This document shows positions 35,874 to 53,761 of a stretch of DNA of 64,000 nt, piece after piece. Each line of letters opens with the position of its first letter. The stretch's first letter is position 1. Where the stretch lies: IMG/VR virus record IMGVR_UViG_3300047558_000137, positions 1 to 64,000 of that record, one strand, 5' to 3'. Both the position numbers and the translations under genes were made by a program. The notes beneath the pieces were generated by a model. The model was not told the DNA's origin, searched no databases, and saw only the letters and a program-made list of their open reading frames with translations.

Positions 35874-36869
35874 ATGGCATATTCACAAGGTGGATTAATT
35901 ACAGCAGGCGACTACAACACATTAGTTGGTACTAGTCCCAGCAGCACAGTCAACACAATTAATACCGTTTGGGCAGTAGGTAGCGGTAGTGCTGGATATG
36001 GCCAAACAGCTATTTCCCAAGTTTCGACAGCTGGCACTATTACAGCCACACAATGGGCAACATTAATTAACAATTTAAACAGCATATTAACACACCAAAG
36101 TGGCTCAGGTTCTGGTATCAGTGCAGTTACCGCAGGTTCTACAATTAACTACTTGTCTACACTAACAACAAACATTACTACAGCCTATACTAACCGTTTG
36201 AACTTTGCATCAAACTCGGCAGTCACAGTTGGAACGAACCAAGCTACTGCATGGTCGGCTACTATTAGTAATGCAGGTAGTAACCCACCTGTTGGTGCAA
36301 CAAGCCCAACATCATTGTCTAGAGCGTTTGGTATTCGTGCTGCATTTTCTAGTGCTGATCAAGCACGTTATTTCTTTAACGCAGGCGGCCGATTGAAACT
36401 AAATTGCTCAGGTTCACAGAACGCCAGTACAACTGCACGTACAAATGAAATTATTGCCATGTTAGGCTTCTTAGGCGGAGTAGCAACCTTCGGCGCCAAC
36501 ACAAACGGTGGCCGTACAGGTACATTAGGTACACTAGGTACAAACGATACTACAAAAGGTTATTATACAAGTACATACAATGCCAACGTAACATTGGTTA
36601 GTGTAACAAGTACAACAACAAACTATACTGCTGATACTTGTAACATTACTGTAAACACAAATGGTACACAAGGCTCAAACAACGATCGTGGTCTAAACGT
36701 TGACTTCTGGATTAACTTAACAACTAATTCGGGCACAGACGGCACAGGTGGTGCATTTGGTTTTGATGACTCATTCGGTGTAAACGTTAACCTCTCGATC
36801 GACATTAGCTATCCAGAAACTACTAACCTTAGCAACAGCTGGGGCTCAGTAACTATTACAGCTCTGTAA
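35874..36869 (+). CDS. Virion structural protein
   Basis: S/T/G/N-rich, GYGQT and RYFFNAGG motifs; last gene of the tail module. Confidence 0.6.
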   Translation: MAYSQGGLITAGDYNTLVGTSPSSTVNTINTVWAVGSGSAGYGQTAISQVSTAGTITATQWATLINNLNSILTHQSGSGSGISAVTAGSTINYLSTLTTNITTAYTNRLNFASNSAVTVGTNQATAWSATISNAGSNPPVGATSPTSLSRAFGIRAAFSSADQARYFFNAGGRLKLNCSGSQNASTTARTNEIIAMLGFLGGVATFGANTNGGRTGTLGTLGTNDTTKGYYTSTYNANVTLVSVTSTTTNYTADTCNITVNTNGTQGSNNDRGLNVDFWINLTTNSGTDGTGGAFGFDDSFGVNVNLSIDISYPETTNLSNSWGSVTITAL

Positions 36870-40032: not shown

Positions 40033-40583
40033 ATACAGTAATTTGTTATTATCCTGGGTCGGGCGGACATAGATATAAAAACTTTTTAACTGACCAAGAA
40101 TATACAACCCCATCTAAAATTTACGATAATAATCAAAAAGATATTTACAATATTAGATATATAACCAACGACACTAAAGTAGTCAATTGTGACAAGACAA
40201 TATTGTTAACACATTGCATGAATAGTTCATTGATTAATGAAAAAATACCAAATAGTCGTATTATTAAAATAGTTGCAAATTTACAACTTAGTTTAGCCCG
40301 CGGGTGGGGCAATTTTTTTAAAGATCTAAAACAATTTGATAGCGATTTGGATAACGCATTTACTACAATTAAATGGCATCTTGAATATTACAATCAATAT
40401 CCAGCTGACATAACAGCAGATGAATTGGTACTAGTGGATATAGATTCAACAACATTTTGCCAAACAATGCGTAGTGAATTAACCAATTACAGCAATCAAA
40501 CATTTAATCGAGCATGGGAAATTTATTCTAAATTTGGCCCGCAAGCACCAGTACTGGATATAGAGCGTAATGAACAAAAGTGA
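40029..40583 (+). CDS. Hypothetical protein (weak sulfotransferase/P-loop-like start)
   Basis: YYPGSGG near the N-terminus; very AT-rich. Confidence 0.55.
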   Translation: MNTVICYYPGSGGHRYKNFLTDQEYTTPSKIYDNNQKDIYNIRYITNDTKVVNCDKTILLTHCMNSSLINEKIPNSRIIKIVANLQLSLARGWGNFFKDLKQFDSDLDNAFTTIKWHLEYYNQYPADITADELVLVDIDSTTFCQTMRSELTNYSNQTFNRAWEIYSKFGPQAPVLDIERNEQK

Positions 40584-41952
40584 TTTTATGGCTAATGCCG
40601 AATGGATGAAAGAGAATTTAGGCAAAGGTCTTTGTCTTGCCAAATGGCAGCAGGTAAGCCTACACTTGCCCACGGGATTAACTAACAGTTGTTATCACCC
40701 GCCACTACATCAGATTCCAGTGGAGCCACTAACAACTAATCCCAGCGCATTACATAACACTGAATATAAAAAAACACAGCGTGTTATAATGCTTAAAGAC
40801 GAGCGCCCGCAGGAATGTAGTTACTGCTGGACACAAGAAGATTTAGGTAATCTAAGCGACAGACATTATAGATCAGGAGAGCCCTGGGCAGCAGAACACT
40901 ATGAAGAAATCCGAAATTCTACAGGATCCGAGGATCCAACGCCTAGTTATGTGGAAGTCAATTTTAATCACGTCTGTAACCTTAAGTGTAGTTATTGCAG
41001 CCCTCAGTTTAGTAGTACTTGGTCTGACGAAGTTACCCGGTATGGTGGCTATCCAACTAGCACTACCCATAATGATCCTGGGCATTTTAAAGACGCTAGA
41101 CGACCTATCCCTGCTCGTGAAGCTAATCCATACGTGGACGCTTTTTGGGAGTGGTGGCCCGAGCTTTACCCTCGACTTAAACACTTCAGGATGACCGGCG
41201 GCGAGCCAATACTAGATCGGAACACATACAAGGTTTTTGATTATGTACTAGCCTTTCCTAAACCAGACCTGCATCTAAACGTTACCAGTAATTTCAGCGT
41301 AGAGCCTGCGATGTTTGACAAGTATCTTGACTATGTTAAACAGTTATGTGATACACAAATTGAACACTTCATGCAGTATGTTAGTCTTGATACTGGCATA
41401 GCAGAACATGCAGAGTATATTAGACACGGAATGTTCTTCAGGCGTGTCGCAACAAATGTTTTACGATATCTACAAGAAGCACCATATCGCAACAGTTTGA
41501 CGTTTATTATTACTATGAACAATCTAAGTGTTCTAGGAATTCAAAGGCAGCTAGAATGGATCTTAGAATTGAGAAAAGTATATAGTGAAACATACCAACG
41601 TGTTTGGTTTGATACGCCCTTACTACGCAGTCCAAGTTGGCAGAGTCTGCAGATCCTACCACCTGTGTATGCTGACCGTTTAGAGCAAGTTGCCAATTGG
41701 ATGGAGTTGCATAGGGAAACGCCAGATGAGCCATTTCAAGGGTTTAAGGACTATGAGATACAGCGTATGCGCCGTGATGTAGATTGGATGCGAGAAGGTA
41801 GCAAACTGGACCCTGAATATGTTAAACTACAACGTGCTGACTTTTATCGTTTCTTCAATGAACACGACAAGCGCAGACGCACAGATTTTTTAAAGACGTT
41901 CCCACAAATGAAAGAGTTCTGGGACGAATGTAGATACCATGCCCAAAATTAA
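40570..41952 (+). CDS. Twitch-domain radical SAM protein
   Basis: CLAKW...SCYH N-terminal module, CSYCW, CNLKCSYC, TGGEP. Confidence 0.88.
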   Translation: MNKSDFMANAEWMKENLGKGLCLAKWQQVSLHLPTGLTNSCYHPPLHQIPVEPLTTNPSALHNTEYKKTQRVIMLKDERPQECSYCWTQEDLGNLSDRHYRSGEPWAAEHYEEIRNSTGSEDPTPSYVEVNFNHVCNLKCSYCSPQFSSTWSDEVTRYGGYPTSTTHNDPGHFKDARRPIPAREANPYVDAFWEWWPELYPRLKHFRMTGGEPILDRNTYKVFDYVLAFPKPDLHLNVTSNFSVEPAMFDKYLDYVKQLCDTQIEHFMQYVSLDTGIAEHAEYIRHGMFFRRVATNVLRYLQEAPYRNSLTFIITMNNLSVLGIQRQLEWILELRKVYSETYQRVWFDTPLLRSPSWQSLQILPPVYADRLEQVANWMELHRETPDEPFQGFKDYEIQRMRRDVDWMREGSKLDPEYVKLQRADFYRFFNEHDKRRRTDFLKTFPQMKEFWDECRYHAQN

Positions 41953-43318
41953 TAACGAAACCGATTCACAATATAAACGCAGAGTCATTGACATCAAGTC
42001 AAATAGTTTCTGCGGCGCCAAATGGTATAACGCCACTATCTGGTTAGGATCGGGGCAAACAACTAGTTGTCATCATCCTTTGCCACATCAAGTTAGTGTA
42101 GAAGATGTAATAGCAAATCCCAAAGCATTGCACAATACACAAAAGAAAAAAATGGAACGTGAGCAGATGCAACGTGGCGAACGCCCAAGTGGATGCGAGT
42201 ACTGTTGGAAAATTGAGGATATGTACAAGGATCCAAAATTTGCTGGCCGCGATGTTGCAGAGCCCATAAGTGATCGCGTATACAAAACAGTTATATATTC
42301 AGATGAGGATTTAAATGCAGCATTTCGTACTCCAGCAAGCGAGGACACAGACCTCCAAACCCTTGAAATTGCGTTCGATCGCACTTGTCAGTTTGCTTGT
42401 TCTTACTGTAACCCAGCTTTTAGTAGTACTTGGGTTAAGGACATTAAACAACATGGACCCTATACCAACTTGGTTAGTGACGGTAGGAACCACTTTACTC
42501 ACACTCACGATAGTAGCCAATTGTATAAGTTCGGTGATCGTAATCCGTACGTGGATGCGTTCCATGCGTGGTGGGAAAGCGACCTCCACAGAACACTAAA
42601 GGAACTACGCATTACTGGCGGCGAACCTTTGATGTCAGGTGAGACATGGAAGTTGATTGACTGGTTTAAAACTAACAAAGGCAAGAGTACGACACGCCTT
42701 GCTATTAACAGTAATCTTGGTACAGACGTTGATATCGATCGTCTATTAGATAGCATTGATGGTGTAGAAGTGGATCTATACACTAGTAATGAAGCTGTTG
42801 GTTTACAGGCTGAATATATTCGTGACGGGTTGGTATTTGATGACTGGGCTAACAATGTAGAACGTTTACTAGACTCAGGTAAGTTCCGTGGTTTGCATAC
42901 AATGTGTACTATCAACGCACTATGCTTGAGTAGCCTAGACAGTTTCCTCGAAATGGTATACAATTGGAAATTAGAGTACGGCAAGGATTCAATTAACTTT
43001 TCACTAAATATATTACGATTCCCAAGTTTTCAAAGTCCTCTAGTACTGCCCGACGATATCCGAACAGAATACCAGGCTAGACTAGCAACGTTTCTAGTAG
43101 ACCACAAAGGCGACAGCACATTCCACGAATATGAAATTAATCAATTGATTAGATTGATTGATTATCTTGATGTAGTTAAGACTCCACACGAAGGTGCAGT
43201 GGCACAGAGTATACTTCAACGCGACTTTAAGAACTTCTATCAACAGTATGACCAACGTAGAGGTAAAAACTTTGATAACACATTCCCAGAGTTAGCAGAA
43301 TGGTACAAAACACTGTAA
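41939..43318 (+). CDS. Twitch-domain radical SAM protein
   Basis: CGAKW...SCHH, CEYCW, CQFACSYC, TGGEP. Confidence 0.88.
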   Translation: MPKINNETDSQYKRRVIDIKSNSFCGAKWYNATIWLGSGQTTSCHHPLPHQVSVEDVIANPKALHNTQKKKMEREQMQRGERPSGCEYCWKIEDMYKDPKFAGRDVAEPISDRVYKTVIYSDEDLNAAFRTPASEDTDLQTLEIAFDRTCQFACSYCNPAFSSTWVKDIKQHGPYTNLVSDGRNHFTHTHDSSQLYKFGDRNPYVDAFHAWWESDLHRTLKELRITGGEPLMSGETWKLIDWFKTNKGKSTTRLAINSNLGTDVDIDRLLDSIDGVEVDLYTSNEAVGLQAEYIRDGLVFDDWANNVERLLDSGKFRGLHTMCTINALCLSSLDSFLEMVYNWKLEYGKDSINFSLNILRFPSFQSPLVLPDDIRTEYQARLATFLVDHKGDSTFHEYEINQLIRLIDYLDVVKTPHEGAVAQSILQRDFKNFYQQYDQRRGKNFDNTFPELAEWYKTL

Positions 43319-44079
43319 AATCTCGATTTAAGAATTTAGTTGTATCTGGGTGCAGCTTTACCCACGAACCAATTAATGAATGGAATCCTTTTAGTTGGGC
43401 AAATACGTTTGGCCATTTAACTGATATGGTGGTACATAATCTTGCTATGCCCGGTGCCGGGAACGATCATATTTCAAAAAGTATAATTTTGTATATGGAA
43501 AGAAATTCATTTGATCCTGCTGATACGTTAGTATTAGTCATGTGGTCCGGAGTGGGAAGAATCGACTGGATTGCAGATAGATCTAAATCAAATTTTGGTG
43601 ACGAGTATCCGTTTACATATAACTATGATGATAACAATGAATTAGTTTTAGGTGGTAACTGGTGGAATAAAAAGAATCCAAGTCCATTAATAAAAACATT
43701 AATAAACTATTCTAAATATCAATCCGACAGCACGTTTGCATTGCACACTTGGTTGGCCATGCAAAATTTATCTAATTATCTAAAAGTAAACAATTTCGAA
43801 TATTACTACACATCATTCTTAAATTACAACAACACAAAAATCAAAGGTGATGCACTAACTGTCAACTTCTTTAAAGAGTTAGAAAATTTAAATCTATCAA
43901 TTGATTATAATCATTGGCTAGATTTTCAAGATGAAGAATACTATGGCGATTGGTCAAGAATACACAATTTTTTAGATGATGACGGCTTTCATCCTAGGTA
44001 TCCAAAAGCAACTGAAGGTTGGACTAAAGAAATTTTAATACCAAAATTAATTAAACTGGGAATTTTATATAACGTATGA
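43300..44079 (+). CDS. SGNH/GDSL-like hydrolase or acyltransferase
   Basis: VSGCSFT, NLAMPGAGND, DGFHP. Confidence 0.65.
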   Translation: MVQNTVKSRFKNLVVSGCSFTHEPINEWNPFSWANTFGHLTDMVVHNLAMPGAGNDHISKSIILYMERNSFDPADTLVLVMWSGVGRIDWIADRSKSNFGDEYPFTYNYDDNNELVLGGNWWNKKNPSPLIKTLINYSKYQSDSTFALHTWLAMQNLSNYLKVNNFEYYYTSFLNYNNTKIKGDALTVNFFKELENLNLSIDYNHWLDFQDEEYYGDWSRIHNFLDDDGFHPRYPKATEGWTKEILIPKLIKLGILYNV

Positions 44080-45410
44080 CAGATAAAACAGTAGCAGGAT
44101 TTTACGATAATGGGTACGATTACAATGCTCGTGCTCCTTATTTCATTGAGCGTGATCAACTAACTGATGACCAATGGAAAAAATTAACAGAAAGCAAAAC
44201 ATTTTGTATGATGCCATGGGTTCATATGCACGCCTTCCCAGATGGTCGTGCGTATCCTTGCTGTTTAGCAGACTACTGGCATCCCGTCGGCGACCTTCGT
44301 AAGAATACTATGAAGGAAATTTGGAACCAGGACAAGTATCGGCAGATCCGAGTAAACATGTTGGAGGATAAAGAGTGTATAGAATGCACTAAGTGTTATG
44401 AAAGAGAACAACACGGTGCGTTTAGTATGCGTAATGATGCCAATCGTAATTATGGGCAGTACATTAAAGAAGTAGAGTCAACGCTCGAAGATGGTACACA
44501 CCCAGAATTTAAGATTAGATACTGGGATGTTCGTTTTAGTAACCTTTGTAATTTTAGTTGCCGTAGTTGCGGTCCTATTTTTAGTAGCAATTGGTATAAT
44601 GATCACGTAAAGTTATACAACCGTAAACCTGATGTACTGGGCAGAGACATGTTGCGTGTAGAATATACCACAGGCGACGAAGATGACATGATTGCTCAAA
44701 TGATGCCGCATCTACCTTACTTGGAACAAGTTTACTTTGCTGGCGGTGAACCATTAATCATGAAGGAACACTACTTCATGTTAGAAAAGTTAATTGAGCT
44801 AGGTAAAACAGATATACGTTTACAGTACAATACAAATTTTAGTGAACTACGTTTCAAAGACAAACATGTGTTTGACTACTGGAAACATTTTAAAAATGTA
44901 AGTGTGGGCGCAAGCCTAGACGCATCGGGCGCCAGAGCAGAACTGATGCGTAAAGGAACTGATTGGCAGCAAACAGTAGACAATCGTAAACGCATGATGC
45001 AAGAAGTACCGCACGTAGACTTCTATATCAGTGCAACAGTAAGTTCAATGAATGTATTACACGTATTAGATTTCCATAAAGAATGGTGCGACTTGGGATT
45101 AATACAACCTAAAGATTTTAATATTAATATATGCCAGGATAGTAAGTGGTATCGTACTGACATATTTCCCTCATGGTTTAAAGAAGAAATTATAACTCCT
45201 GCTTACCAAGAGCACATTAAATGGCTAGAGCCACAAGACTCATTGTCTCGAGCAACCAACGGATTTAAGAGTGTATTGAGCTTTACTAACGCAACAGATA
45301 ACACCAGTGAATGGTCACGTTTTATTGAAGAAACAAGTAAGTTGGACAAAATTAGAAATGAAAACTTTTGGGATGTATTTCCTGAAATTAAAAAGGCCTT
45401 ATCAAAATGA
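44076..45410 (+). CDS. Twitch-domain radical SAM protein
   Basis: CMMPWVH...PCC, CNFSCRSC, AGGEP, YNTN. Confidence 0.9.
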   Translation: MTDKTVAGFYDNGYDYNARAPYFIERDQLTDDQWKKLTESKTFCMMPWVHMHAFPDGRAYPCCLADYWHPVGDLRKNTMKEIWNQDKYRQIRVNMLEDKECIECTKCYEREQHGAFSMRNDANRNYGQYIKEVESTLEDGTHPEFKIRYWDVRFSNLCNFSCRSCGPIFSSNWYNDHVKLYNRKPDVLGRDMLRVEYTTGDEDDMIAQMMPHLPYLEQVYFAGGEPLIMKEHYFMLEKLIELGKTDIRLQYNTNFSELRFKDKHVFDYWKHFKNVSVGASLDASGARAELMRKGTDWQQTVDNRKRMMQEVPHVDFYISATVSSMNVLHVLDFHKEWCDLGLIQPKDFNINICQDSKWYRTDIFPSWFKEEIITPAYQEHIKWLEPQDSLSRATNGFKSVLSFTNATDNTSEWSRFIEETSKLDKIRNENFWDVFPEIKKALSK

Positions 45411-46627
45411 CATTGCCATCAACTATTTGCATGTTGCCCTGGATGAGTATTGAAGCTAGCCCAATGGGCACAGCTCGTCCCTGCTGTTTGGCTAGAGAGG
45501 AAATCACAGATGAAAATGGAAGTAAGTTTAGTCTCAAGGATACGCCCCTCGAAACCATTTATAAAAGTGAATATATGCAGACTCTTAGACGACAGTTTCG
45601 TGCTGGCGATAAACCAGAAACCTGTCGTCTTTGTTGGGAAGAAGAAGCCGCAGGCCGCGATAGCAAGAGGATTCATAGCCGAGTTCGTCTCAAAGAATTA
45701 TATCAGCAGGTCGATTGGTATAATGACTGTCCTGACCAACTCTGGTTTATTGACCTTAAACTTGGTAACATTTGCAACTTAAAGTGCCGTATATGTGGCA
45801 GTTGGTCTAGCAGTAAGTGGGCCGCAGAAGAAATGGATTACTTACCTAAAGGTGCTAATAAGAAAGAACACATTGCTTATCAATGGTTAAAGCAGGGCAA
45901 GTGGCCCGAAGAAAGCCCCGACTTCTGGGAAAATCTAAAATCACTGTTGCCCAACATCAAGTACTTTGAGTTCACTGGTGGAGAGCCCTGGCTCATTGAA
46001 GAACACTGGGACTTGTTAAAGTATGCAGTAGAAACTGGCGACAGCAAGCATATTGATATTCACTACAATACTAATGCTACTGTGGACCCAATGGGTAAAG
46101 ATAAGTCTTGGGTGTGGGGCGAGTTTGGCCGTGTTGACATTGCATTTAGTATCGACAACGTAGAAGAAAGATTTGAGTACGAACGTTACGGCGCAAATTG
46201 GATTGAAGCAAACAACATCATCAACGACATTCACATGTCTAGATATATTGATAATCCAAACATCACTACTCAGCTTTGCTTTACCATCAACATTCAAAAC
46301 GTTTACTACTTAGATGAGCTGTTGGCCTGGGCAGAAACAAAAGAATTTGGCAGCATCTATTTTAATATGTTACATAGTCCCGATCATATGAGCATACAGC
46401 GCATGACACCAGCGGCCAAGGATTTAGTACTAAACAAACTAAAAACAACATTTTGGTCTACAGACAAGTATCAACAAGAAATAGATAATGTTATACAGTT
46501 TATCGAAAATGGTCCAGGTAGTGATGGTACTGAATTCTTAGAAAAAATGCAGCGCACAGATGCGTATCGTAAACAAAACTTTATGGATACACATCCTGAA
46601 ATAGCTCGCGCAATGGGATACCAATGA
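45407..46627 (+). CDS. Twitch-domain radical SAM protein
   Basis: CMLPW...PCC, CNLKCRIC, TGGEP, YNTN. Confidence 0.9.
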   Translation: MTLPSTICMLPWMSIEASPMGTARPCCLAREEITDENGSKFSLKDTPLETIYKSEYMQTLRRQFRAGDKPETCRLCWEEEAAGRDSKRIHSRVRLKELYQQVDWYNDCPDQLWFIDLKLGNICNLKCRICGSWSSSKWAAEEMDYLPKGANKKEHIAYQWLKQGKWPEESPDFWENLKSLLPNIKYFEFTGGEPWLIEEHWDLLKYAVETGDSKHIDIHYNTNATVDPMGKDKSWVWGEFGRVDIAFSIDNVEERFEYERYGANWIEANNIINDIHMSRYIDNPNITTQLCFTINIQNVYYLDELLAWAETKEFGSIYFNMLHSPDHMSIQRMTPAAKDLVLNKLKTTFWSTDKYQQEIDNVIQFIENGPGSDGTEFLEKMQRTDAYRKQNFMDTHPEIARAMGYQ

Positions 46628-47307
46628 CATCGGCTATAATTGGTTACACTGGATTTATTGGCAAGTATCTGTGTCGTAATACAAAGTTTGATTATTTCTT
46701 TAATTCTGAGAATATCGATGAAATAACAAAAAACAGTTATGACGTAGTCTATTGTGCCGCACCTCATGGTAATAGAATTTTATCAAGTGCTGACCCTGCG
46801 GCCGATTGTGCCAATGTGGAAAAATTAATATCCAGTTTAACTAAACTAGACACCAATAGATTTATATTAATTGGTACTGTTGATGCATTGGTATCTAATA
46901 GAGATTACGGAAAGAATAGAAAACTATTAGAAGATTTTGTTAAACAGAATTTTCATTCATATAACATTGTAAGATTAAGTTCATTGATATTTGATACTAT
47001 ACAAAAAAATCTATTGTATGATTTAAAACATCAACAATGGTTAGAATCAATTAATCCGGAGTCAACACTACAGTGGTATCCGTTAGAAAAAATAATTGAT
47101 GATATTGCCTGGGCAGTTGATAACCGCGTCAACGAACTAAATCTAGTATCTGAACCTGTTAACAATTTAGAAATTATTCAGCAATTTGCACCCAACTGTC
47201 TTGCCAGTATCTCAGAGAAGAAGGATGCAACGCATTACAATATCACACCATATCGTTTTAGTAAAAAAGAAATATTTTCTTACATTGAAAGATATATGCA
47301 GCAATGA
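46624..47307 (+). CDS. NAD-dependent epimerase/dehydratase-like protein
   Basis: IIGYTGFIG Rossmann motif, YGKNR, IVRL. Confidence 0.7.
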   Translation: MTSAIIGYTGFIGKYLCRNTKFDYFFNSENIDEITKNSYDVVYCAAPHGNRILSSADPAADCANVEKLISSLTKLDTNRFILIGTVDALVSNRDYGKNRKLLEDFVKQNFHSYNIVRLSSLIFDTIQKNLLYDLKHQQWLESINPESTLQWYPLEKIIDDIAWAVDNRVNELNLVSEPVNNLEIIQQFAPNCLASISEKKDATHYNITPYRFSKKEIFSYIERYMQQ

Positions 47308-48203
47308 TAGACCTGGTACTACGTCCCAATGAATTTACTAGTTTTACTTCTTTTTATCTAGAGCAGTTCTGGAGAAAGTTTTTTAACATATCATACTATG
47401 ATCCAACTAAAACATATGATAAGAATAGAACACTATTTGCAGTATGGTGGCAAACCGTAGATTCGGATCCCTGGCCAGCTCATATGAGAGATTTGGGCTA
47501 TAAGGTTGTGGTTGATAATATATGGGAAAGGCAACAGTTTCGTACAGATTACCATTGGATAGAACACAAATATTCAATGTGTTGGAATGAAAGTCTGTGG
47601 TGGGAAAGTCTAGGCTATGCTGATTATGTTCCACAAAGAAATTTAGAGTATCTTGCATTTATGCAGATGCGCTTGGCAAAGCCCGAGAGAGATAAGATAC
47701 ACAAAGAGCTTGATCCATTCTTAGATAGAATGTTATGGAGTTACTTAGCAAAGAATCAAACACTTGATGACGACACAGACGATAAGCTGTCGGGCCAACG
47801 ATATATGCATCCAAATTGGTACAACAAAACCTATTGCAGTATAGTAGTAGAAACCTATGTAAATGGCGGGCTACATGCGTCGGAGAAGACATATAAACCT
47901 ATAGCATACTATCACCCTTTTATGACTATAAGTGTTCCTGGTACACTGGCATTTTTAAAAGAGGCTGGGTTTGAAACATTTGATAATTTATTTGATGAAA
48001 GCTACGATAACATACATAATTTAGATTTACGATTAGATATTATAAAATCAAATTTGGAATCTATTAGATTAGATAAATCATATGATAAACTAACATTAGA
48101 TAAAATAGAATATAATCATAATAAATTTTTTAATAAACAAGAAACCTTAACATCAATGGAACAAGAAATAGTTAATCCATTATTAGAATATGCAGAAGCC
48201 TGA
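47304..48203 (+). CDS. Hypothetical protein, possibly GT-B-like glycan-related
   Basis: SIVVET...SEKTYKPI...GFETFDNLFDESYD C-terminal pattern. Confidence 0.55.
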   Translation: MIDLVLRPNEFTSFTSFYLEQFWRKFFNISYYDPTKTYDKNRTLFAVWWQTVDSDPWPAHMRDLGYKVVVDNIWERQQFRTDYHWIEHKYSMCWNESLWWESLGYADYVPQRNLEYLAFMQMRLAKPERDKIHKELDPFLDRMLWSYLAKNQTLDDDTDDKLSGQRYMHPNWYNKTYCSIVVETYVNGGLHASEKTYKPIAYYHPFMTISVPGTLAFLKEAGFETFDNLFDESYDNIHNLDLRLDIIKSNLESIRLDKSYDKLTLDKIEYNHNKFFNKQETLTSMEQEIVNPLLEYAEA

Positions 48204-49497
48204 TACACTATGCATGGCGCCGTGGACGCACACATACCTAAGCCCACAAACAGAACGTAGGATGTGTTGTGCCAGCCGAGAACCTGCACAAAACTTTCAG
48301 CAGTATATCGACACTAGCGCCGGCACCGGGCGATATATACCTATCACTTTGGATGAACACTGGAATGGAGAGCACATGAGGTCCGTGCGCCTACGTATGA
48401 TGCGTGGGGAAATCCTCCCAGAGTGCGAAGTATGTAATGATCGACTGTTGAATACTTCCGTTTACCGCAGTTATTTTAATCAACTGTTTGGTCATAAGTA
48501 CAATGAAGCAATGGCAAATACAGCCGAAGATGGTACGACTACATTGCAGCCAGTTAGTTGGGATTACCGTTTTAGTAATCTCTGTAACTTCAAATGTCGC
48601 ATGTGTGGGGACATGTTAAGCAGTGCTTGGGAGTCCGAGCAACGCCAACACAACATGATCAATTGGCACGATCCAAAGAACAATTGGATGAAGCCTGAGA
48701 TCAAAAAACAAATTGAAAGTTTTCAAGAAGGTCAAATAGAAGCCGAGTTCTCAAAGGCAGTTGAAGAACACAGAGTTGAAGAAGTATACTGGGTAGGTGG
48801 CGAGCCACTAATGTATGAACAACACTGGCGTTACATGGCTCGCATAGTTGAACTAGGAGATGGACCAAATGTTTACGCTCGTTATAACACCAACTTATCT
48901 CGCGTTAATTACAAGGGTATCAATTTGTATAGTGATATTCTTAGCCGGGTTCGTGACTGGCAAATATGCGCTTCAATTGATGGCACTGGGAAAATCGGGG
49001 AGTATATCAGAACCGGACTCGATTATGATCAATGGCTTAGAAACTTCCGTGCAGGAGTTGAGATCGCAACTCACAGACGTCAGATGCGAATTGACTTTAC
49101 ACTCACACTGCCAGGAATGTTCGAAGTTGAACGAATACAACAGCTCGCAGACAAGTTAAATGTAGACGTACTTGCTAAAGTAATTTTTAGTTTTAGCCCG
49201 GACATAGTTATGTCACCTTTAGCACTACCCAGAGAACTTCTAGATCCCTGGATAGACGAAACACTAAGAGAATTCGATTCAATTGGCACGAGCCCGTTAA
49301 AGGATATCCTTGTCCAGCTAAAAACTAGACCTACATTTGAAGAACAATGGCCCGACGAATACCGTACGGCTATTGCAAAAGGCAAAGCTCGTGTGTTAAA
49401 ATTAGAGCAAATACGTACACAGTCAATTACTATGACCGATATATTAAGTCAACGTCCGGACGTATTAGAATGGTGGATGAGCATTGAAACAATTTAA
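48190..49497 (+). CDS. Twitch-domain radical SAM protein
   Basis: CMAPWTH...MCC, CNFKCRMC, VGGEP, YNTN, ASIDG. Confidence 0.9.
   Translation: MQKPDTLCMAPWTHTYLSPQTERRMCCASREPAQNFQQYIDTSAGTGRYIPITLDEHWNGEHMRSVRLRMMRGEILPECEVCNDRLLNTSVYRSYFNQLFGHKYNEAMANTAEDGTTTLQPVSWDYRFSNLCNFKCRMCGDMLSSAWESEQRQHNMINWHDPKNNWMKPEIKKQIESFQEGQIEAEFSKAVEEHRVEEVYWVGGEPLMYEQHWRYMARIVELGDGPNVYARYNTNLSRVNYKGINLYSDILSRVRDWQICASIDGTGKIGEYIRTGLDYDQWLRNFRAGVEIATHRRQMRIDFTLTLPGMFEVERIQQLADKLNVDVLAKVIFSFSPDIVMSPLALPRELLDPWIDETLREFDSIGTSPLKDILVQLKTRPTFEEQWPDEYRTAIAKGKARVLKLEQIRTQSITMTDILSQRPDVLEWWMSIETI
48869..49159 (+). CDS. Putative nested +1-frame protein with N-terminal TM and coiled coil
   Basis: AGGAG 9 nt before ATG 48869; +1 stops are dense on both flanks and absent inside. 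Confidence 0.5.
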   Translation: MFTLVITPTYLALITRVSICIVIFLAGFVTGKYALQLMALGKSGSISEPDSIMINGLETSVQELRSQLTDVRCELTLHSHCQECSKLNEYNSSQTS

Positions 49498-49705
49498 AAT
49501 CAAAAACAGCATGATACCAGAAGTTACCCGATGGTGTCTGGAGAATTTAGGTAAAGAAAATATTCGTTGGTGGGTGTCACCTATTGGTACAGGTAACTGG
49601 AATGGTACCACATCAAAGTTTGAAAATGATATACAGTTGTTTATTGATGTTACTGAAGAAGAAGAAACCAACTTAACATATTTTGTTTTACGATATGATC
49701 AATAA
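49484..49705 (+). CDS. Hypothetical protein
   Basis: 73-aa ORF coupled to neighbours. Confidence 0.6.
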   Translation: MKQFKIKNSMIPEVTRWCLENLGKENIRWWVSPIGTGNWNGTTSKFENDIQLFIDVTEEEETNLTYFVLRYDQ

Positions 49706-50771
49706 AGTTATTGTTACACTACGTAACCCGCTGGCAAAAAATGAAACGTTAGACTACATAATTGAAGTAAACGATAGTCCAATGGGTTCTCGTTGGTACA
49801 TGGCCCTATATGATCTATTAAAGCAAAACCGGTATCTTGAAAAGAACTTTTGCTTTTTAGGTTTTCCTGACAGTGCCCGCGACCTAGAATATATTTGTCA
49901 AGAACTAGAATGGGCCGTTAAGCAGATTAATAGTTTCTTTGATCCCAGTGACTACTACATAGGACAGGCCTTTACGCCAGACAATCTGCGAGAAGGACTC
50001 GATCCTAATCAAGCGATGTTCAACGTATTGCACAATCACTTTGAGCACTTACAAGGTACAGTTTGGGGTCTAAGTGAATGGTACAAACGTGCCGACTATG
50101 AAACTAAGTTTGCCATTAGACAACTAAACAATCTATGTCACGAAGCAGAAAGCCTACTACTAAGTCAACGCAAACAGGTAGAAGCACCAGACTGGGTTAG
50201 ACCCAGTCAAATAACTACATTCTTAAATGCACAGCGATTGGAATTCCCCGATGAACTTAAAACGACTTTTGAAGAAACGAGATATGATCGTAAATTCGGT
50301 CAGGTATACTTACATTGGACCCAAATTGGGAAGACGCTATACGAGGTATTTAGAGATGAAGGGGGCGTGGCGGTGGATCAAGCCACTTGCGATGCTATTA
50401 CTCACTTACGATACTATTCGGGTGAATTTGATATTGAGTGGGCGCAGGACGTTGTCTATGGTGGACCGCATCCTTGGCACACCCGAGAAATTGATTTATT
50501 CAGATCTTGGCTTGAACAAAACAGATTCAACTTGGTGGACAGAAATTACAATTTTGGATATCACGCCGTCGGCCAAGTTAATCTTGCAGAGTCTTTTGGA
50601 ACAACCAACCACCGTGAAGTTTGGCCCATACTCTCTAGACACCTCGATATCTATAGCATACAAGCCGGCAGTGCCAAGTCAGTATACGACTATAACTGGA
50701 CAGACGTAGATTACTACCAACAACAAATAGAAAGATTGAAACCCGGATATGATTATAGTAGCAGGCGGTGA
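49695..50771 (+). CDS. Hypothetical protein
   Basis: About 358 aa; ATG 49695 preferred over TTG 49683. Confidence 0.75.
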   Translation: MINKVIVTLRNPLAKNETLDYIIEVNDSPMGSRWYMALYDLLKQNRYLEKNFCFLGFPDSARDLEYICQELEWAVKQINSFFDPSDYYIGQAFTPDNLREGLDPNQAMFNVLHNHFEHLQGTVWGLSEWYKRADYETKFAIRQLNNLCHEAESLLLSQRKQVEAPDWVRPSQITTFLNAQRLEFPDELKTTFEETRYDRKFGQVYLHWTQIGKTLYEVFRDEGGVAVDQATCDAITHLRYYSGEFDIEWAQDVVYGGPHPWHTREIDLFRSWLEQNRFNLVDRNYNFGYHAVGQVNLAESFGTTNHREVWPILSRHLDIYSIQAGSAKSVYDYNWTDVDYYQQQIERLKPGYDYSSRR

Positions 50772-51646: not shown

Positions 51647-52305
51647 TTAAACACATACTAACTGTCGGCGACAGTTTTACCTACGGGGAAGAACTTGAAA
51701 ACAGAGACAATGCATATCCCTATTATCTTGCTAAAGGGTTAAAAGCTGAAGTAGTTAATCTTGGACAGCCTAGTGGTGGTAATCGTCAAATGGTACGCAA
51801 AGTAATAGATTATGTTCTAAGTGGTGAACCGTTAGATCTAGTAATCATTGGGTGGACAAGTCCCGGGCGTATAGAGTTTGCAGATGCCAATGGTGTGTTT
51901 GATATATGGCCCGGCTACGGGGGAGACCTGTTTAGACGTGACGGGCAAGAGTGGCGACTAGAATTACTAGACTACATTAACAAGCATCACGATCCAGAAT
52001 ATCTATATAGACAACATCTTAACGATATTATTCTGTTACAGAGTTTTTTACAACAGCGTAACATACGTTATCTAATGTTAAAGGTAGTTGGTAATGAGTA
52101 TTATCACAATACCTACTACAATGAAGATGCAGTATTGCCTAAACAAATTGATGCAACACACTTTGTGGGATGGCCCAATCAAGGGATGGCAGAATGGACA
52201 AACGGATGTCGACGTGGACCACGTGGGCATTTTCTCGAAGAAGGTCACAGAAAGGTGACAGCAAAACTTTATGAACATATTAGGAATCTCGGCTGGCTTT
52301 CATGA
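51643..52305 (+). CDS. SGNH/GDSL-like hydrolase or acyltransferase
   Basis: VGDSFTYG, NLGQPSGGN, GHF. Confidence 0.7.
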   Translation: MIKHILTVGDSFTYGEELENRDNAYPYYLAKGLKAEVVNLGQPSGGNRQMVRKVIDYVLSGEPLDLVIIGWTSPGRIEFADANGVFDIWPGYGGDLFRRDGQEWRLELLDYINKHHDPEYLYRQHLNDIILLQSFLQQRNIRYLMLKVVGNEYYHNTYYNEDAVLPKQIDATHFVGWPNQGMAEWTNGCRRGPRGHFLEEGHRKVTAKLYEHIRNLGWLS

Positions 52306-53761
52306 TGCAGCCGCAACAGTATTAGACGATGATGGGAACATCTTATTTGCCTCACACAGCGAGCGTTACAGTAAGCAGAAGTCTGATGCTAATTTTTGCA
52401 GCCCTCTTATTCGTGAGCTTGAGCAGTACAATCCAATTGGAACCGCAGCCTACTATGAGCGCCCATTGGTTAAACAGCTACGACAGCTTTATGCAGGACA
52501 GGGATTTGAATGGAACAAACTATCTACAAAGAAGTTGGTACATGATCAAATTGGTTATGCCAAGTGGTGGGACCTTAGCAAGTACAGAAGTTTCAACCAC
52601 CATCTTAGTCATGCAGCCGCTGGATTCCAGACTAGCAGTTTTGATAGGGCAACGGTCGTTGTAATCGATGCAATAGGTGAATTTGAAACAGTAACCATAT
52701 GGGGTGCAGAATATGATAGCACAGGTCGAGCAGTTTATAAAAAGTTGTGGCAACGCAATTACCCGCATAGCATTGGACTCTTTTACACTGGAGCTACTAA
52801 GCGGGTTGGCCTTAAGCCACTAGACGAAGAATACATTCTAATGGGCATGGCCGCCTATGGCAACCGCGGATTCAGCGATTTACTAAAGATGGACTTAATT
52901 GACAATGAATGGGAAATTAAATTCAAACAGAATATGCACACAGGGCTAACATTAAAGTATCTAAATGATGCAACAGCAGATTTTGATGTAGCAGCCGCGG
53001 CCCAAGATCTAGTAGAAGATTTAATACTTAACGTTATGCTTAGAGCCAAACAGTTTAAGTGGAGTGACAATTTAGTTTACATGGGCGGGTGCGCCCTTAA
53101 TTGTAGTGCCAATGCACGTATAGGAGCTTACTTTGATAATATATGGATTATGCCTAATCCTGGTGACGCTGGTAGCAGCCTTGGTGCTGCCGCTTTGGCT
53201 TATGGGCGTAGAATTAACTGGACCAGTGCTTATCTCGGGCATAATATTCCTGGCAATTATCCCGTTATGGAGCTTTTGGATAGGCTACTTGCTGAACAGA
53301 TTGTGGGAGTGGCAAGTGGACGTGCCGAATTCGGCCCCCGCGCACTCGGAAACCGTAGCCTCCTTGCGGACCCTCGAGGCAGCGAGATTAAGGAGAGAGT
53401 AAATGACATTAAACGTAGGCAACAGTTCAGACCCTTTGCGCCAGTTATTTTGGAAGAGTTGGCTGACACTTACTTTGATATGCCTCGCGGTTGGGGTAAC
53501 AGTAGGTATATGCAAACAGTCGCTCGTTGTAGGTTTCCTGACCTATTTCCTGCTATCGTTCATCATGACGGCACTAGTCGTGTACAAACTGTGCCGCGTG
53601 ATGGATCGGGAATACGAGAGCTGTTAGAACGATGGTTTGTAATGACTGACTGCCCTATGCTGCTCAATACAAGCCTGAACATACGTGGCGAACCAATGGT
53701 TAATGATCGTGCAGATGCAGATCGATTTGAAAAATTATATGGTATAAAGGTCTGCTCATGA
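52271..53761 (+). CDS. Carbamoyltransferase (NodU/CmcH family)
   Basis: GFHDAAA, HSERY, HHLSHAAAG, GDAGSSLGAA, GRAEFGPRALGNRSLLADP, RPFAP, LLNTSLN. Confidence 0.93.
   Translation: MNILGISAGFHDAAATVLDDDGNILFASHSERYSKQKSDANFCSPLIRELEQYNPIGTAAYYERPLVKQLRQLYAGQGFEWNKLSTKKLVHDQIGYAKWWDLSKYRSFNHHLSHAAAGFQTSSFDRATVVVIDAIGEFETVTIWGAEYDSTGRAVYKKLWQRNYPHSIGLFYTGATKRVGLKPLDEEYILMGMAAYGNRGFSDLLKMDLIDNEWEIKFKQNMHTGLTLKYLNDATADFDVAAAAQDLVEDLILNVMLRAKQFKWSDNLVYMGGCALNCSANARIGAYFDNIWIMPNPGDAGSSLGAAALAYGRRINWTSAYLGHNIPGNYPVMELLDRLLAEQIVGVASGRAEFGPRALGNRSLLADPRGSEIKERVNDIKRRQQFRPFAPVILEELADTYFDMPRGWGNSRYMQTVARCRFPDLFPAIVHHDGTSRVQTVPRDGSGIRELLERWFVMTDCPMLLNTSLNIRGEPMVNDRADADRFEKLYGIKVCS
53133..53402 (+). CDS. 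Putative nested +1-frame 89-aa two-TM protein in the carbamoyltransferase gene
   Basis: AGGAG 6 nt before TTG; two hydrophobic helices. Confidence 0.55.
   Translation: MIIYGLCLILVTLVAALVLPLWLMGVELTGPVLISGIIFLAIIPLWSFWIGYLLNRLWEWQVDVPNSAPAHSETVASLRTLEAARLRRE
53403..53627 (+). CDS. Putative nested +1-frame 74-aa two-TM protein in the carbamoyltransferase gene
   Basis: TAAGGAG 7 nt before ATG; TAA-ATG junction with the preceding nested ORF. Confidence 0.6.
   Translation: MTLNVGNSSDPLRQLFWKSWLTLTLICLAVGVTVGICKQSLVVGFLTYFLLSFIMTALVVYKLCRVMDREYESC

What the first reader, a model, noticed from the sequence alone, without database searches (positions are those of the whole stretch)
53122..53627. 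Two-gene nested mini-operon inside the carbamoyltransferase gene
About 165 host codons contain a single +1 stop, and that stop is the junction of two ORFs. The first runs TAGGAG-N6-TTG (53133) for 89 aa (IIYGLCLILVTLVAALVLPLWLMG...PVLISGIIFLAIIPLWSFWIGYLL). The second runs TAAGGAG-N7 with TAA|ATG (53403) for 74 aa (WLTLTLICLAVGVTVGI...LVVGFLTYFLLSFIMTALVVY). The near-perfect Shine-Dalgarno comes from host codons AAG GAG AGA (K-E-R). Two coupled two-TM proteins suggest a complex or a holin/antiholin- or toxin/antitoxin-like pair (inference). This is the strongest single case for the nested layer.
Basis: partly seen in the sequence, partly recalled or inferred. Interest (0 to 1): 0.8.

Follow-up and report, generated by a model that had tools for sequence, protein, structure and literature searches.

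The report
Two hidden genes inside enzyme gene
Inside the carbamoyltransferase gene of a giant freshwater phage, a second reading frame carries two small membrane-protein genes that dozens of related phages have kept intact, and one of them also occurs elsewhere as an independent gene, a rare visible case of a gene born by overprinting and then leaving its nest.

Summary
The +1 frame of the carbamoyltransferase gene (52271-53761) holds ORF1 (53133-53402, TTG, 89 aa) and ORF2 (53403-53627, ATG, 74 aa), each behind a Shine-Dalgarno motif.

- **Conservation:** In 61 dereplicated orthologues (63-86% identical host protein), +1 stops fall to about 15% of expectation in two sharply bounded blocks and are normal between and around them.
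- **Stop avoidance:** NTA codons are avoided only where the next base would make a +1 stop (5% against 36%).
- **Translation signals:** Start codons and Shine-Dalgarno motifs are held at synonymous host sites.
- **Outgroups:** Carbamoyltransferases at 41-51% identity lack both ORFs.
- **ORF2 family:** ORF2 belongs to an undescribed family of small two-helix membrane proteins that also occurs as free-standing genes (hhalign 99.65%).
- **Transitional copy:** One free copy (L094) still carries, in its -1 frame, a decayed fossil of exactly the overlapped carbamoyltransferase segment. The gene was therefore born nested and later escaped.
- **ORF1:** It has no free relatives, and its support is somewhat weaker.

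The holin/antiholin, toxin-antitoxin and obligate-complex ideas find no support, because the two ORFs are lost independently. Function is unknown. Translation has not been shown experimentally.

The parts
52271..53761 (+). Host gene: Nol-like carbamoyltransferase, 496 aa. This is the older reading frame.
   Evidence: Pfam Carbam_trans_N 1.9e-34 and Carbam_trans_C 3.4e-46. PHROG 1601 8.7e-92. 80 orthologous loci.
53121..53126 (+). TAGGAG: a +1-frame stop (TAG 53121-53123) immediately 5' of ORF1, overlapping its Shine-Dalgarno AGGAG (53122-53126).
   Evidence: The host codon here is NTA in 48/61 orthologues and the next is GGA in 46/61 (family background for GGA 0.27). A Shine-Dalgarno 4-mer is present in 40/61 against 12.8 in synonymous shuffles, max 20. 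The genome's own genes use GGAG with a 6-8 nt spacer.
53133..53402 (+). ORF1, +1 frame, TTG start, 89 aa, stop TAA 53400-53402. Predicted helices 3-23 and 32-63 form a membrane hairpin, followed by a variable tail.
   Evidence: TTG is conserved in 58/61 (host Phe = TTT; background 0.76; null 46, max 53). Intact with TTG and at least 60 aa in 44/60 orthologues. Hydropathy. AlphaFold2 pLDDT 72.
53135..53306 (+). Block A: the conserved core of ORF1 (the two hydrophobic helices), where +1 stops are purged.
   Evidence: +1 stops are 0.15-0.19 of expectation across 61 orthologues. The column-permutation null gives 149+-26 stops against 37 observed (P<5e-4); the block is open in 48/61 against 4.4 expected.
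53321..53400 (+). Linker between the two conserved blocks. It holds the non-conserved ORF1 tail, and +1 stops occur at or above expectation although the host protein is highly conserved here.
   Evidence: Observed/expected 0.98-1.37. Fully conserved host Leu-Gly sites use TTA/CTA in 28/61 and 21/61 orthologues here, against 2-5/61 inside the blocks.
53389..53395 (+). TAAGGAG: Shine-Dalgarno of ORF2, 7 nt before its ATG.
   Evidence: A Shine-Dalgarno 5-mer is present in 48/61 orthologues against 20.2 in synonymous shuffles, max 30. Alignment of the junction. The motif is retained (AAGGA) in the free-standing copy L094.
53403..53627 (+). ORF2, +1 frame, ATG start, 74 aa, stop TAG 53625-53627. 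It has a polar N-terminus with an LR..FW+ motif, helix 1 with GxxxG, a short turn and helix 2. It is a member of an undescribed family of small membrane proteins.
   Evidence: ATG in 59/61 (host Asn = AAT 60/61; background 0.58). Block B (53405-53579) has 22 stops against 85+-21 and is open in 49/61 against 12.3. It scores 88 bits against a profile built only from free-standing genes, while synonymous shuffles give 10+-8, max 39. hhalign 99.65%. AlphaFold2 helices 11-36 and 41-73.

Best explanation
The carbamoyltransferase gene of this freshwater jumbo myovirus is dual-coding over about 500 nt. Two genes were created by overprinting in its +1 frame, where the host's third codon base becomes the new frame's second base.

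Expression (inferred from sequence). Each gene is translated from its own internal ribosome-binding site on the carbamoyltransferase mRNA: AGGAG-6 nt-TTG for ORF1 and AAGGAG-7 nt-ATG for ORF2. A +1 stop lies directly upstream of each start.

Products (predicted). Each product is a small inner-membrane helical hairpin with both ends probably in the cytoplasm.

Origin (supported by comparison). Both ORFs arose after the split from carbamoyltransferases 41-51% identical and before the radiation of the clade at 63% identity or more. They have since been held by purifying selection, with scattered independent losses. ORF2 founded a family. A roughly 300-nt piece holding ORF2 and its ribosome-binding site was copied out of the gene, and the enzyme frame decayed in the copy. 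Free-standing descendants now sit in related large phages, often in the same radical-SAM/SPASM cluster.

Function (least certain, about 0.3). I take them to be small membrane adaptor proteins that act at the host inner membrane together with the surrounding radical-SAM/carbamoyltransferase/sugar-activation cluster. I do not think they are a lysis pair or a toxin-antitoxin pair.
For: - Family-wide purge of +1 stops confined to two blocks. Observed/expected is 0.37 and 0.41 over the ORFs against 0.97 in the rest of the gene. It is 0.09-0.24 inside the blocks and 1.0-1.37 in the linker and flanks. This holds under a column-permutation null that keeps phylogeny.
- The avoidance is of stops, not of codons. 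Leu/Ile/Val NTA codons make up 5.1% when the next codon starts with a purine and 36% when it starts with a pyrimidine. Outside the blocks the values are 39% and 44%. All 13 in-block purine-context columns are at or below 0.10, against a median of 0.34 in 30 outside columns.
- Start codons and Shine-Dalgarno motifs are kept at synonymous host sites. Shine-Dalgarno plus start is present in 39/61 for ORF1 (null 9.7, max 15) and 48/61 for ORF2 (null 11, max 21). The genome uses this motif and spacing for its own genes.
- Protein-level tuning. Fourfold third positions are 58% T in the blocks and 28% outside. In ORF2 the T3 share follows helix-turn-helix-tail: 0.63, 0.10, 0.61, 0.26. The host Leu that gives the conserved Trp of ORF2 is NTG in 46/61, against a background of 0.33.
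- Independent family. The ORF2 profile finds free-standing 61-79 aa genes among 1.84 billion proteins. A profile built from the free genes alone scores the window's ORF2 at 88 bits, against 10+-8 for synonymous shuffles and about 0 for outgroup alternative frames. hhalign gives 99.65%, E 3.7e-25. ORF1 against the same profile gives nothing, which controls for composition.
- Direction of evolution. The outgroups lack both ORFs. Both are open across the whole ingroup tree. The free copy L094:2651-2992 aligns at DNA level to window 53330-53640. Its -1 frame still reads host residues 378-453 at 70% identity (E 1.4e-29) with catalytic motifs mutated, stops upstream and a 1-nt deletion at GTA(A)ATG.
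- Controls. The same method gives no signal for two other long +1 ORFs nearby.
Against: - No experimental evidence of translation exists. The only RNA-library data are short contigs that may be DNA carry-over.
- Synonymous diversity in the blocks is only mildly reduced (0.6-1.0 of expectation). The constraint is on openness and residue class rather than exact sequence, especially for ORF1.
- ORF1 rests on a TTG start, has no independent homologues, diverges to 28% identity, and carries 5-7 stops in four lineages.
- ORF2 is broken in 12 of 61 orthologues.
- Nothing tested here reveals a function. Free copies sit in varied contexts: primase/helicase, methyltransferase and a REC fusion. This weakens a specific link to the carbamoyltransferase.
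- The L093 record (186 kb, about half a genome) has the free gene but no carbamoyltransferase.
Confidence: 0.8

Rival explanations
1. Only ORF2 is a real gene. ORF1's open, hydrophobic frame is a side effect of another constraint on that stretch (for example U-rich third positions or mRNA accessibility), or it is a translated peptide without sequence-specific function.
For: ORF1 has no free-standing homologues. Identity to the window's copy falls to 28-45%. Its T3 pattern is less clearly helix-turn-helix: 0.56, 0.52, 0.60. It has a TTG start and a tail of variable length. Synonymous diversity in its middle is at expectation.
Against: The context-specific avoidance of +1 stops includes the block A columns. 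The 5' edge of the purge coincides with the TTG, and a conserved Shine-Dalgarno and stop lie just upstream. The block is open in 48/61 against 4.4 expected. ORF1 remains intact in L089.
Confidence: 0.12
2. One reading: the two products form a functional pair, either holin/antiholin for lysis timing or a toxin-antitoxin-like pair, expressed by translational coupling.
For: Both are small two-helix membrane proteins with charged C-termini, as class II holins are (holin classes from general knowledge). TAA|ATG abuts in the window. One free family member has a weak Pfam LydA-holin hit, E 0.0056. No endolysin could be located in the genome to rule a lysis role in or out.
Against: The two ORFs are lost independently. 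ORF2 relatives occur without any ORF1. The abutment is not conserved. There are no holin, toxin-antitoxin or defence family matches. The scanned neighbours are biosynthetic enzymes, not lysis genes. The complex prediction was uninformative.
Confidence: 0.08
3. Neither ORF is a gene. The open hydrophobic +1 frame is the ordinary shadow of T-rich third codon positions and of a conserved host protein.
For: The frame relation (host position 3 becomes alternative position 2) makes hydrophobic, stop-poor shadows common. Genome-wide, +1 stops are 8.6% below the shuffle expectation, and several genes show long +1 gaps. Two nearby long +1 ORFs are indeed chance.
Against: NTA codons are used freely in the blocks whenever they make no stop. 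Equally conserved host segments such as the linker and the N-terminus show no purge. Start and Shine-Dalgarno conservation is far above the null. ORF2 is homologous to independent free-standing genes, and synonymous recoding destroys that similarity. The outgroups show no purge.
Confidence: 0.04
4. The +1 segments are reached by programmed ribosomal frameshifting from the enzyme frame, giving enzyme-hairpin fusion proteins rather than separate small proteins.
For: Public protein sets contain host/alternative-frame chimeras (P0006, P0010, P0013, P0017).
Against: A +1 stop lies immediately upstream of each start and is enriched there (48/61 and 60/61). The starts and Shine-Dalgarno motifs are conserved. 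Free-standing relatives begin at the same Met. The chimeras come from fragmentary or split gene calls typical of assembly indels.
Confidence: 0.03

Closest known systems
phiX174 lysis gene E nested in gene D (Microviridae)
   Same: A small membrane protein gene lies wholly inside another gene on the same strand. The frame relation is the same: the T-rich third position of the host frame becomes the second position of the new frame and yields Leu-rich transmembrane sequence (review PMC8227390). It has its own ribosome-binding site and arose by overprinting.
   Different: The phage here is a 374-kb dsDNA phage under no obvious pressure for genome compression. There are two successive nested genes, each a two-helix hairpin rather than a single helix. 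No lysis function has been shown. One nested gene has free-standing relatives.
Lambda Rz1 embedded in Rz (spanin genes)
   Same: In a tailed dsDNA phage, a small envelope-protein gene is fully embedded in the +1 frame of another gene with its own start. In other phages the equivalent genes are overlapped or fully separated (general knowledge, not tested here).
   Different: Rz1 is a lipoprotein that works with the protein encoded by its host gene in lysis. Here the host gene is a soluble-type enzyme, the nested products are helical hairpins with no lipobox, and no lysis cassette is nearby.
Proposed 'loss of overlap' of overprinted genes (Sabath et al. 2012, PMC3494269; Rogozin et al. 2002 as cited there)
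   Same: That paper suggests genes that overlap nothing today may have been born by overprinting and later lost the overlap, possibly by duplication. The present series matches this: nested, then nested plus a free copy downstream (L089), then a free copy with a host-frame fossil (L094), then free copies without trace.
   Different: There it is a hypothesis. Here a transitional form is visible at DNA level.
EMC6 (Pfam PF07019), small two-helix subunit of the ER membrane protein complex
   Same: Size, two-helix hairpin and glycine-rich first helix. Pfam gives 23.7 bits against a cut-off of 23.3 for the window's ORF2; 13/48 nested and 3/9 free members match at E<0.01. It is also the first hit by protein-language-model features (0.85, 199/256 shared).
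   Different: The family profiles do not find any solved EMC6 chain. ORF2 arose in an alternative frame of a phage enzyme gene, so common descent is excluded. The likeness is convergent and is only a lead.
T4 Imm-type small membrane proteins of superinfection exclusion
   Same: Phage-encoded membrane proteins of about 80 aa with two predicted helices, expressed with non-structural genes (general knowledge). One free ORF2 relative lies between primase and helicase genes.
   Different: No sequence similarity was found (PHROGs). Exclusion was not tested.

Membership tests
Overprinted nested phage genes (phiX174 E-in-D, lambda Rz1-in-Rz type) | ORF lies wholly inside another protein-coding gene, same strand, different frame | tested here: met
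   ORF1 53133-53402 and ORF2 53403-53627 lie in the +1 frame of 52271-53761.
Overprinted nested phage genes (phiX174 E-in-D, lambda Rz1-in-Rz type) | Own translation initiation signals | tested here: met
   AGGAG-6 nt-TTG and AAGGAG-7 nt-ATG. Both are conserved far above synonymous-shuffle nulls and match the genome's Shine-Dalgarno usage. This is sequence-level evidence only.
Overprinted nested phage genes (phiX174 E-in-D, lambda Rz1-in-Rz type) | Open frame maintained by selection across relatives | tested here: met
Overprinted nested phage genes (phiX174 E-in-D, lambda Rz1-in-Rz type) | Host frame has the wider phylogenetic distribution (it is older) | tested here: met
   Carbamoyltransferases of RsoM2USA, AG-345-D19 and C48C1 (41-51% identity) have +1 stops at the expected rate, and their alternative frames score about 0 bits.
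Overprinted nested phage genes (phiX174 E-in-D, lambda Rz1-in-Rz type) | Product demonstrated in infected cells | not testable with these tools
   The phage is uncultivated and comes from a freshwater metagenome. Metatranscriptome contigs are inconclusive.
ORF2-like small membrane proteins (unnamed; free-standing genes P0014, P0016, P0018, P0020-P0024) | Reciprocal profile similarity over the full length | tested here: met
   The nested profile finds the free genes at E 2.5e-9 to 3e-4 among 1.84 billion proteins. The free-only profile scores the window's ORF2 at 88 bits. hhalign gives 99.65% over 71 columns.
ORF2-like small membrane proteins (unnamed; free-standing genes P0014, P0016, P0018, P0020-P0024) | Family motifs: R..FW+ before helix 1, GxxxG in helix 1, Ser in the turn, G..(T)Y in helix 2 | tested here: met
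   Alignments A1 and A3. The window has LRQLFWK, VGVTVG, KQS and GFLTY. The Tyr after GxxxG-I in most free copies is Cys in the nested ones.
Holin (class II) / holin-antiholin pair | Small protein with two transmembrane helices and a charged C-terminus | tested here: inconclusive
   Hydropathy and AlphaFold2 fit, but the feature is shared by many unrelated small membrane proteins.
Holin (class II) / holin-antiholin pair | Encoded in a lysis cassette next to an endolysin or spanin | tested here: not met
   The scanned neighbours are GDSL-like, DUF6071, APS-kinase/cytidylyltransferase, DUF2061 and radical SAM/SPASM genes. No PF00959, PF01510 or PF01464 domain occurs anywhere in the genome.
Holin (class II) / holin-antiholin pair | Match to a holin family model | tested here: not met
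   No PHROG or Pfam holin hit for ORF1 or ORF2 or their orthologues. One free member has a weak LydA hit, E 0.0056.
Toxin-antitoxin pair | Two partners co-conserved and co-inherited | tested here: not met
   Losses are independent on the tree. ORF2 relatives occur without ORF1.
Toxin-antitoxin pair | Match to known toxin, antitoxin or defence models | tested here: not met
   PADLOC gives no hits. Pfam gives none.
EMC6 (PF07019) | Score above Pfam's gathering threshold across the family | tested here: inconclusive
   The window's ORF2 scores 23.7 against 23.3. Only 13/48 nested and 3/9 free members match at E<0.01.
EMC6 (PF07019) | Sequence relation to solved EMC6 subunits or common descent | tested here: not met
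   Profiles A1 and A3 find no EMC6 chain in the PDB at E<=10. A de novo origin in an alternative frame excludes homology.

The most novel reading that the evidence does not exclude
A whole family of free-standing small membrane proteins of large freshwater phages was born de novo in the alternative reading frame of a carbamoyltransferase gene. This family would include the membrane module fused behind a response-regulator receiver domain (P0019). It was then emancipated by copying out the overlapped segment. The signature motif of the family (LR..FW+) would be the frozen +1 'shadow' of the enzyme's universal FRPFAPVILE motif. All stages are still extant: pre-gene outgroups, nested gene, nested plus free paralogue, free gene with enzyme fossil, free gene without trace, and domain fusion.
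Probability: 0.55. Interest if true: 0.85.

Novelty: new member of a known kind. Interest (0 to 1): 0.72.

Why it matters
Gene callers forbid genes nested in the same strand, so such genes go unseen. In the public protein sets these ORFs appear only where the enzyme gene is split or cut short, or as host/+1-frame chimeras.

Here a purely comparative test separates real nested genes from the many chance +1 ORFs in the same region. The test rests on context-specific stop avoidance, on conservation of Shine-Dalgarno and start codon at synonymous sites, and on recoding controls against an independent family profile.

The case shows overprinting at work in a 374-kb phage, where genome compression cannot be the motive. 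It also supplies what the overprinting literature has mostly had to assume (PMC3494269): a visible route from a nested gene to an ordinary free-standing gene family, including a transitional copy that still carries the fossil of the parent frame. That makes the long-standing idea that some orphan genes are escaped overprinted genes directly testable in a natural series.

It also adds an uncharacterised small membrane protein family linked to a phage radical-SAM/carbamoyltransferase cluster.

Tried and rejected
- **Codon bias at conserved residues as the cause of the purge.** Rejected, because the equally conserved linker and N-terminus show normal NTA use.
- **General T-rich third positions as the cause.** Rejected by the purine/pyrimidine context test.
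- **EMC6 membership.** The Pfam and language-model likeness is not backed by profile search of solved chains and is incompatible with the origin.
- **ORF1+ORF2 complex prediction.** Score 0.00, no verdict. It is not evidence either way.
- **Locus search with the free-family alignment.** P0020 alone found nothing in viral contigs. P0016 found one more free copy (L093).
- **Host-frame remnants in other free copies.** None in L084-L087, L090, L093, L095 or the L089 downstream copy. Only L094 has one.
- **ORF1 relatives.** The word-index search found only nested copies on split gene calls.
- **Reads.** Only assembled contigs were available. Short pieces from one metatranscriptome match, but DNA carry-over cannot be excluded.
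- **Endolysin search with three common families.** Nothing found, so a lysis cassette could not be located.
- **PADLOC and PHROGs.** No informative hits.
- **Literature.** No paper was found on nested genes in phage carbamoyltransferases or jumbo phages.
Full report
**What is there**

The window belongs to a single 374,314-bp virus record with baseplate, tail-lysozyme and tail-fibre genes, so it is a jumbo tailed phage. It comes from freshwater metagenomes. The finding lies in a 496-aa Nol-like carbamoyltransferase gene, 52271-53761.

This gene sits in a cluster with:
- five SPASM/radical-SAM genes;
- a GDSL-like protein and a DUF6071 protein;
- an APS-kinase/cytidylyltransferase fusion;
- a DUF2061 membrane protein.

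- ORF1 is 53133-53402 (TTG, 89 aa), behind TAGGAG and 6 nt.
- ORF2 is 53403-53627 (ATG, 74 aa), behind TAAGGAG and 7 nt.
- TAA|ATG abuts, and there is one +1 stop in 167 host codons.

The frame is the one in which the host's third codon base is the middle base of the new codon. T-rich wobble positions therefore give hydrophobic, stop-poor 'shadows' as a matter of course. That is the obvious null, and I set out to test it.

**One sequence is suggestive, not decisive**

Shuffling synonymous codons within the gene predicts 8.3 +1 stops in the region against 1 seen (0 of 5000 shuffles). The same null applied to 316 long ORFs of the genome is too narrow. 5.4% of genes reach P<=0.01, +1 stops are 8.6% low genome-wide, and this gene is one of about seven outliers.

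**Comparative test**

A scan of viral contigs gave 80 orthologous loci, 62-100% identical in the enzyme, and 61 remained after dereplication. Summed over them, observed against expected +1 stops are:
- 125 against 335 in the ORF1 part;
- 71 against 174 in the ORF2 part;
- 1427 against 1478 in the rest of the gene.

In 20-codon windows the ratio is 0.15-0.19 at 53141-53290 and 0.09-0.24 at 53411-53560. It is 0.98-1.37 in the 80-nt linker between them and about 1 elsewhere.

A null that permutes whole alignment columns among columns with the same conserved amino acid keeps the phylogeny.
- Block A: 149+-26 stops against 37 observed, and open in 4.4 sequences against 48 of 61.
- Block B: 85+-21 against 22, and open in 12.3 against 49 of 61 (P<5e-4 and P=0.001).

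**Stops are avoided, not codons**

Inside the blocks, Leu/Ile/Val codons ending in A make up 5.1% when the next codon begins with a purine, which would create TAA or TAG in the +1 frame. They make up 36% when the next codon begins with a pyrimidine. Outside the blocks the figures are 39% and 44%.

All 13 in-block purine-context columns are at or below 0.10. The 30 such columns outside have a median of 0.34.

Fully conserved Leu-Gly sites use TTA/CTA in 2-5 of 61 sequences inside the blocks but in 21-28 of 61 in the linker. Neither conservation of the host residue nor a dislike of NTA codons explains the pattern. Selection for an open +1 frame does.

**Translation signals sit at synonymous sites**

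For ORF1:
- the host Phe codon is TTT in 58/61, which gives TTG;
- the preceding Gly is GGA in 46/61 (family background 0.27);
- the codon before that ends in TA in 48/61, giving TAGGA: a +1 stop fused to a Shine-Dalgarno.

For ORF2:
- the host Asn is AAT in 60/61 (background 0.58), which gives ATG;
- the preceding Val is GTA or GTG in 60/61, giving a +1 stop;
- AAGGA lies upstream.

Shine-Dalgarno plus start is present in 39/61 for ORF1 and 48/61 for ORF2. Synonymous shuffles give 9.7 (max 15) and 11 (max 21). The genome's own genes use AGGA/GGAG with a 6-8 nt spacer.

**Protein-level signal**

- Fourfold third positions are 58% T in the blocks and 28% outside.
- In ORF2 the T share follows the predicted architecture: N-terminus 0.39, helix 1 0.63, turn 0.10, helix 2 0.61, tail 0.26.
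- The host Leu codon that yields the conserved Trp of ORF2 is NTG in 46/61, against a background of 0.33.
- Hydropathy exceeds the recoded null, with median z of 3.0 and 2.4.
- AlphaFold2 gives helical hairpins: ORF2 helices 11-36 and 41-73, ORF1 helices 3-23 and 32-63 plus a tail helix, both at pLDDT 72.
- The distribution of charges suggests both ends are cytoplasmic (inference).

**Age and losses**

Three outgroup carbamoyltransferases at 41-51% identity have +1 stops at the expected rate in both blocks. These are Ralstonia phage RsoM2USA, marine virus AG-345-D19 and phage C48C1. Their alternative frames score about 0 bits against the ORF2 family.

On the enzyme tree both blocks are open throughout the ingroup, including its earliest branches. 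Breaks are scattered. ORF1 carries 5-7 stops in L041, L069, L075 and L076, where ORF2 is open in three. ORF2 is broken in L044, L080, L038, L017 and others, where ORF1 is open. The two are therefore not an obligate pair.

**The unexpected part: ORF2 has free-standing relatives**

A profile of 48 nested ORF2 sequences (A1) was searched against 1.84 billion representatives and gave 24 hits. About half are the nested ORF itself, called on fragments or as frame chimeras.

P0014, P0016, P0018 and P0020-P0024 (61-79 aa) are ordinary free-standing genes, and P0019 carries the module behind a receiver domain. Their host-equivalent frame is full of stops.

Support for real homology:
- A profile built only from the free genes (A3) scores the window's nested ORF2 at 88 bits. 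That is as high as true members (76-94 bits), and it finds about 70 nested copies.
- hhalign of A1 against A3 gives 99.65%, E 3.7e-25, over 71 columns. ORF1 (A2) against A3 gives nothing, so hydrophobic composition is not the cause.
- Recoding the enzyme gene synonymously drops the A3 score from 65-90 bits to 10+-8, max 46, in 9 of the 12 orthologues tested. The other three score 26-41 bits against nulls of 2-13.

The phages with free copies are relatives of this one. Their flanking genes match window 35874-36860, window 41002-41934 and genome 66.8-69.3 kb at 30-39% identity. Several free copies lie beside SPASM/radical-SAM genes (L084, L086, L093). One lies directly after a carbamoyltransferase gene that still holds both nested ORFs (L089).

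**Direction of evolution**

The enzyme segment under ORF2 is colinear with all carbamoyltransferases and holds their FRPFAP and HHDGTSR motifs. It therefore cannot be the newcomer.

A transitional form exists. L094:2651-2992 is a free-standing family member with no carbamoyltransferase on its 6.9-kb scaffold.
- The DNA aligns to window 53330-53640.
- Its -1 frame still reads host residues 378-453 at 70% identity (E 1.4e-29).
- The motifs have decayed to FRLFTP and HVDRTSR, there are stops upstream, and one base is deleted at GTA(A)ATG.
- The retained piece is just ORF2 plus its ribosome-binding region.

This is the 'loss of overlap' route that Sabath et al. proposed as a possibility (PMC3494269). 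ORF1 has no free relatives.

**What it does**

This is not shown. Pfam, PHROGs, PADLOC and solved structures give nothing firm.

A likeness to EMC6 appears in Pfam at threshold and in language-model features (0.85). It must be convergent.

No endolysin family was found in the genome, and the scanned neighbours are biosynthetic genes. The holin reading therefore has no positive support.

The recurrent neighbourhood suggests a small membrane adaptor working with this biosynthetic cluster. That neighbourhood consists of radical SAM/SPASM genes, a carbamoyltransferase and a 517-583-aa unknown protein. The receiver-domain fusion also fits an adaptor or anchor. I hold this at about 0.3. Other contexts (primase/helicase, methyltransferases) leave exclusion-type or other membrane roles open.

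**Controls and limits**

The same pipeline finds no conservation for the 111-aa +1 ORF at 52329-52664, which is open in 3/61. It also finds none for the 160-aa +1 ORF at 50227-50709, with ratio 0.85 against 0.92 and open in 8/56. A general 'nested layer' is therefore not supported.

Limits:
- Synonymous diversity in the blocks is only mildly reduced.
- Translation has not been observed.
- The RNA-library contigs are inconclusive.
- The complex prediction gave no answer.

Noticed in passing
window 52329-52664 (+): A 111-aa +1 ORF in the N-terminal half of the same carbamoyltransferase gene. It is open in only 3 of 61 orthologues (typically 4-7 stops), so it is a chance ORF and a useful negative control.
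   Followed up: yes
window 50227-50709 (+), inside gene 49683-50771: A 160-aa basic, non-hydrophobic +1 ORF nested in the upstream gene. Family-wide +1 stop ratio is 0.85 against 0.92 in the rest of that gene, and it is open in 8 of 56 orthologues. It is not conserved; it may be very young or chance.
   Followed up: yes
window 40570-49497 (+): Five paralogous radical-SAM genes. Three of them carry a SPASM domain placed N-terminal to the radical-SAM core. The same kind of cluster flanks free-standing ORF2-like genes in related phages (L084, L089, L093). The product of the cluster is unknown.
   Followed up: partly
L089:6518-8186: A related phage contig has the carbamoyltransferase gene with both nested ORFs and also a free ORF2-family gene starting 14 nt before the enzyme's stop. 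Its nested ORF2 has lost the FW motif, carries polar residues in the helices and scores only 22 bits against the free-family profile. This could mean relaxation, but it is a single case.
   Followed up: partly
protein P0019 (ENA metagenome contig, no DNA available): A 203-aa protein with a response-regulator receiver domain followed by the ORF2-type two-helix module. It lies next to another receiver gene and an HD-domain gene. The module may have been recruited as a membrane anchor.
   Followed up: no
proteins P0006, P0010, P0013, P0017; loci L091, L092: Public protein sets contain chimeras that switch between the enzyme frame and the +1 frame, and carbamoyltransferase genes split into pieces with ORF1 called in between. 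These are probably indel errors of assemblies. They are the only reason the nested ORFs appear in protein databases.
   Followed up: partly
genome coordinates 127826-128584 (+), 274846-276018 (-), 222442-222921 (-), 210353-211270 (-), outside the window: Other genes of this genome with +1 open stretches far longer than synonymous shuffles give (P<1/300). They have not been tested comparatively. Genome-wide, +1 stops are 8.6% below expectation.
   Followed up: no
whole genome (374,314 bp): No match to the common endolysin families PF00959, PF01510 or PF01464 in a record rated complete, apart from the baseplate hub/tail lysozyme PHROG hit at 10503-11888. The lysis genes of this phage are unidentified.
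   Followed up: partly
window 53096-53590: Contigs from four freshwater runs pile up 10-50 times more deeply here than on the rest of the gene at 85% identity or more. The dual-coding stretch is the part best conserved at nucleotide level among environmental relatives.
   Followed up: no
window 16044-27305 (+): A single 3753-aa ORF, next to a 1035-aa one, in the structural region. Not examined.
   Followed up: no
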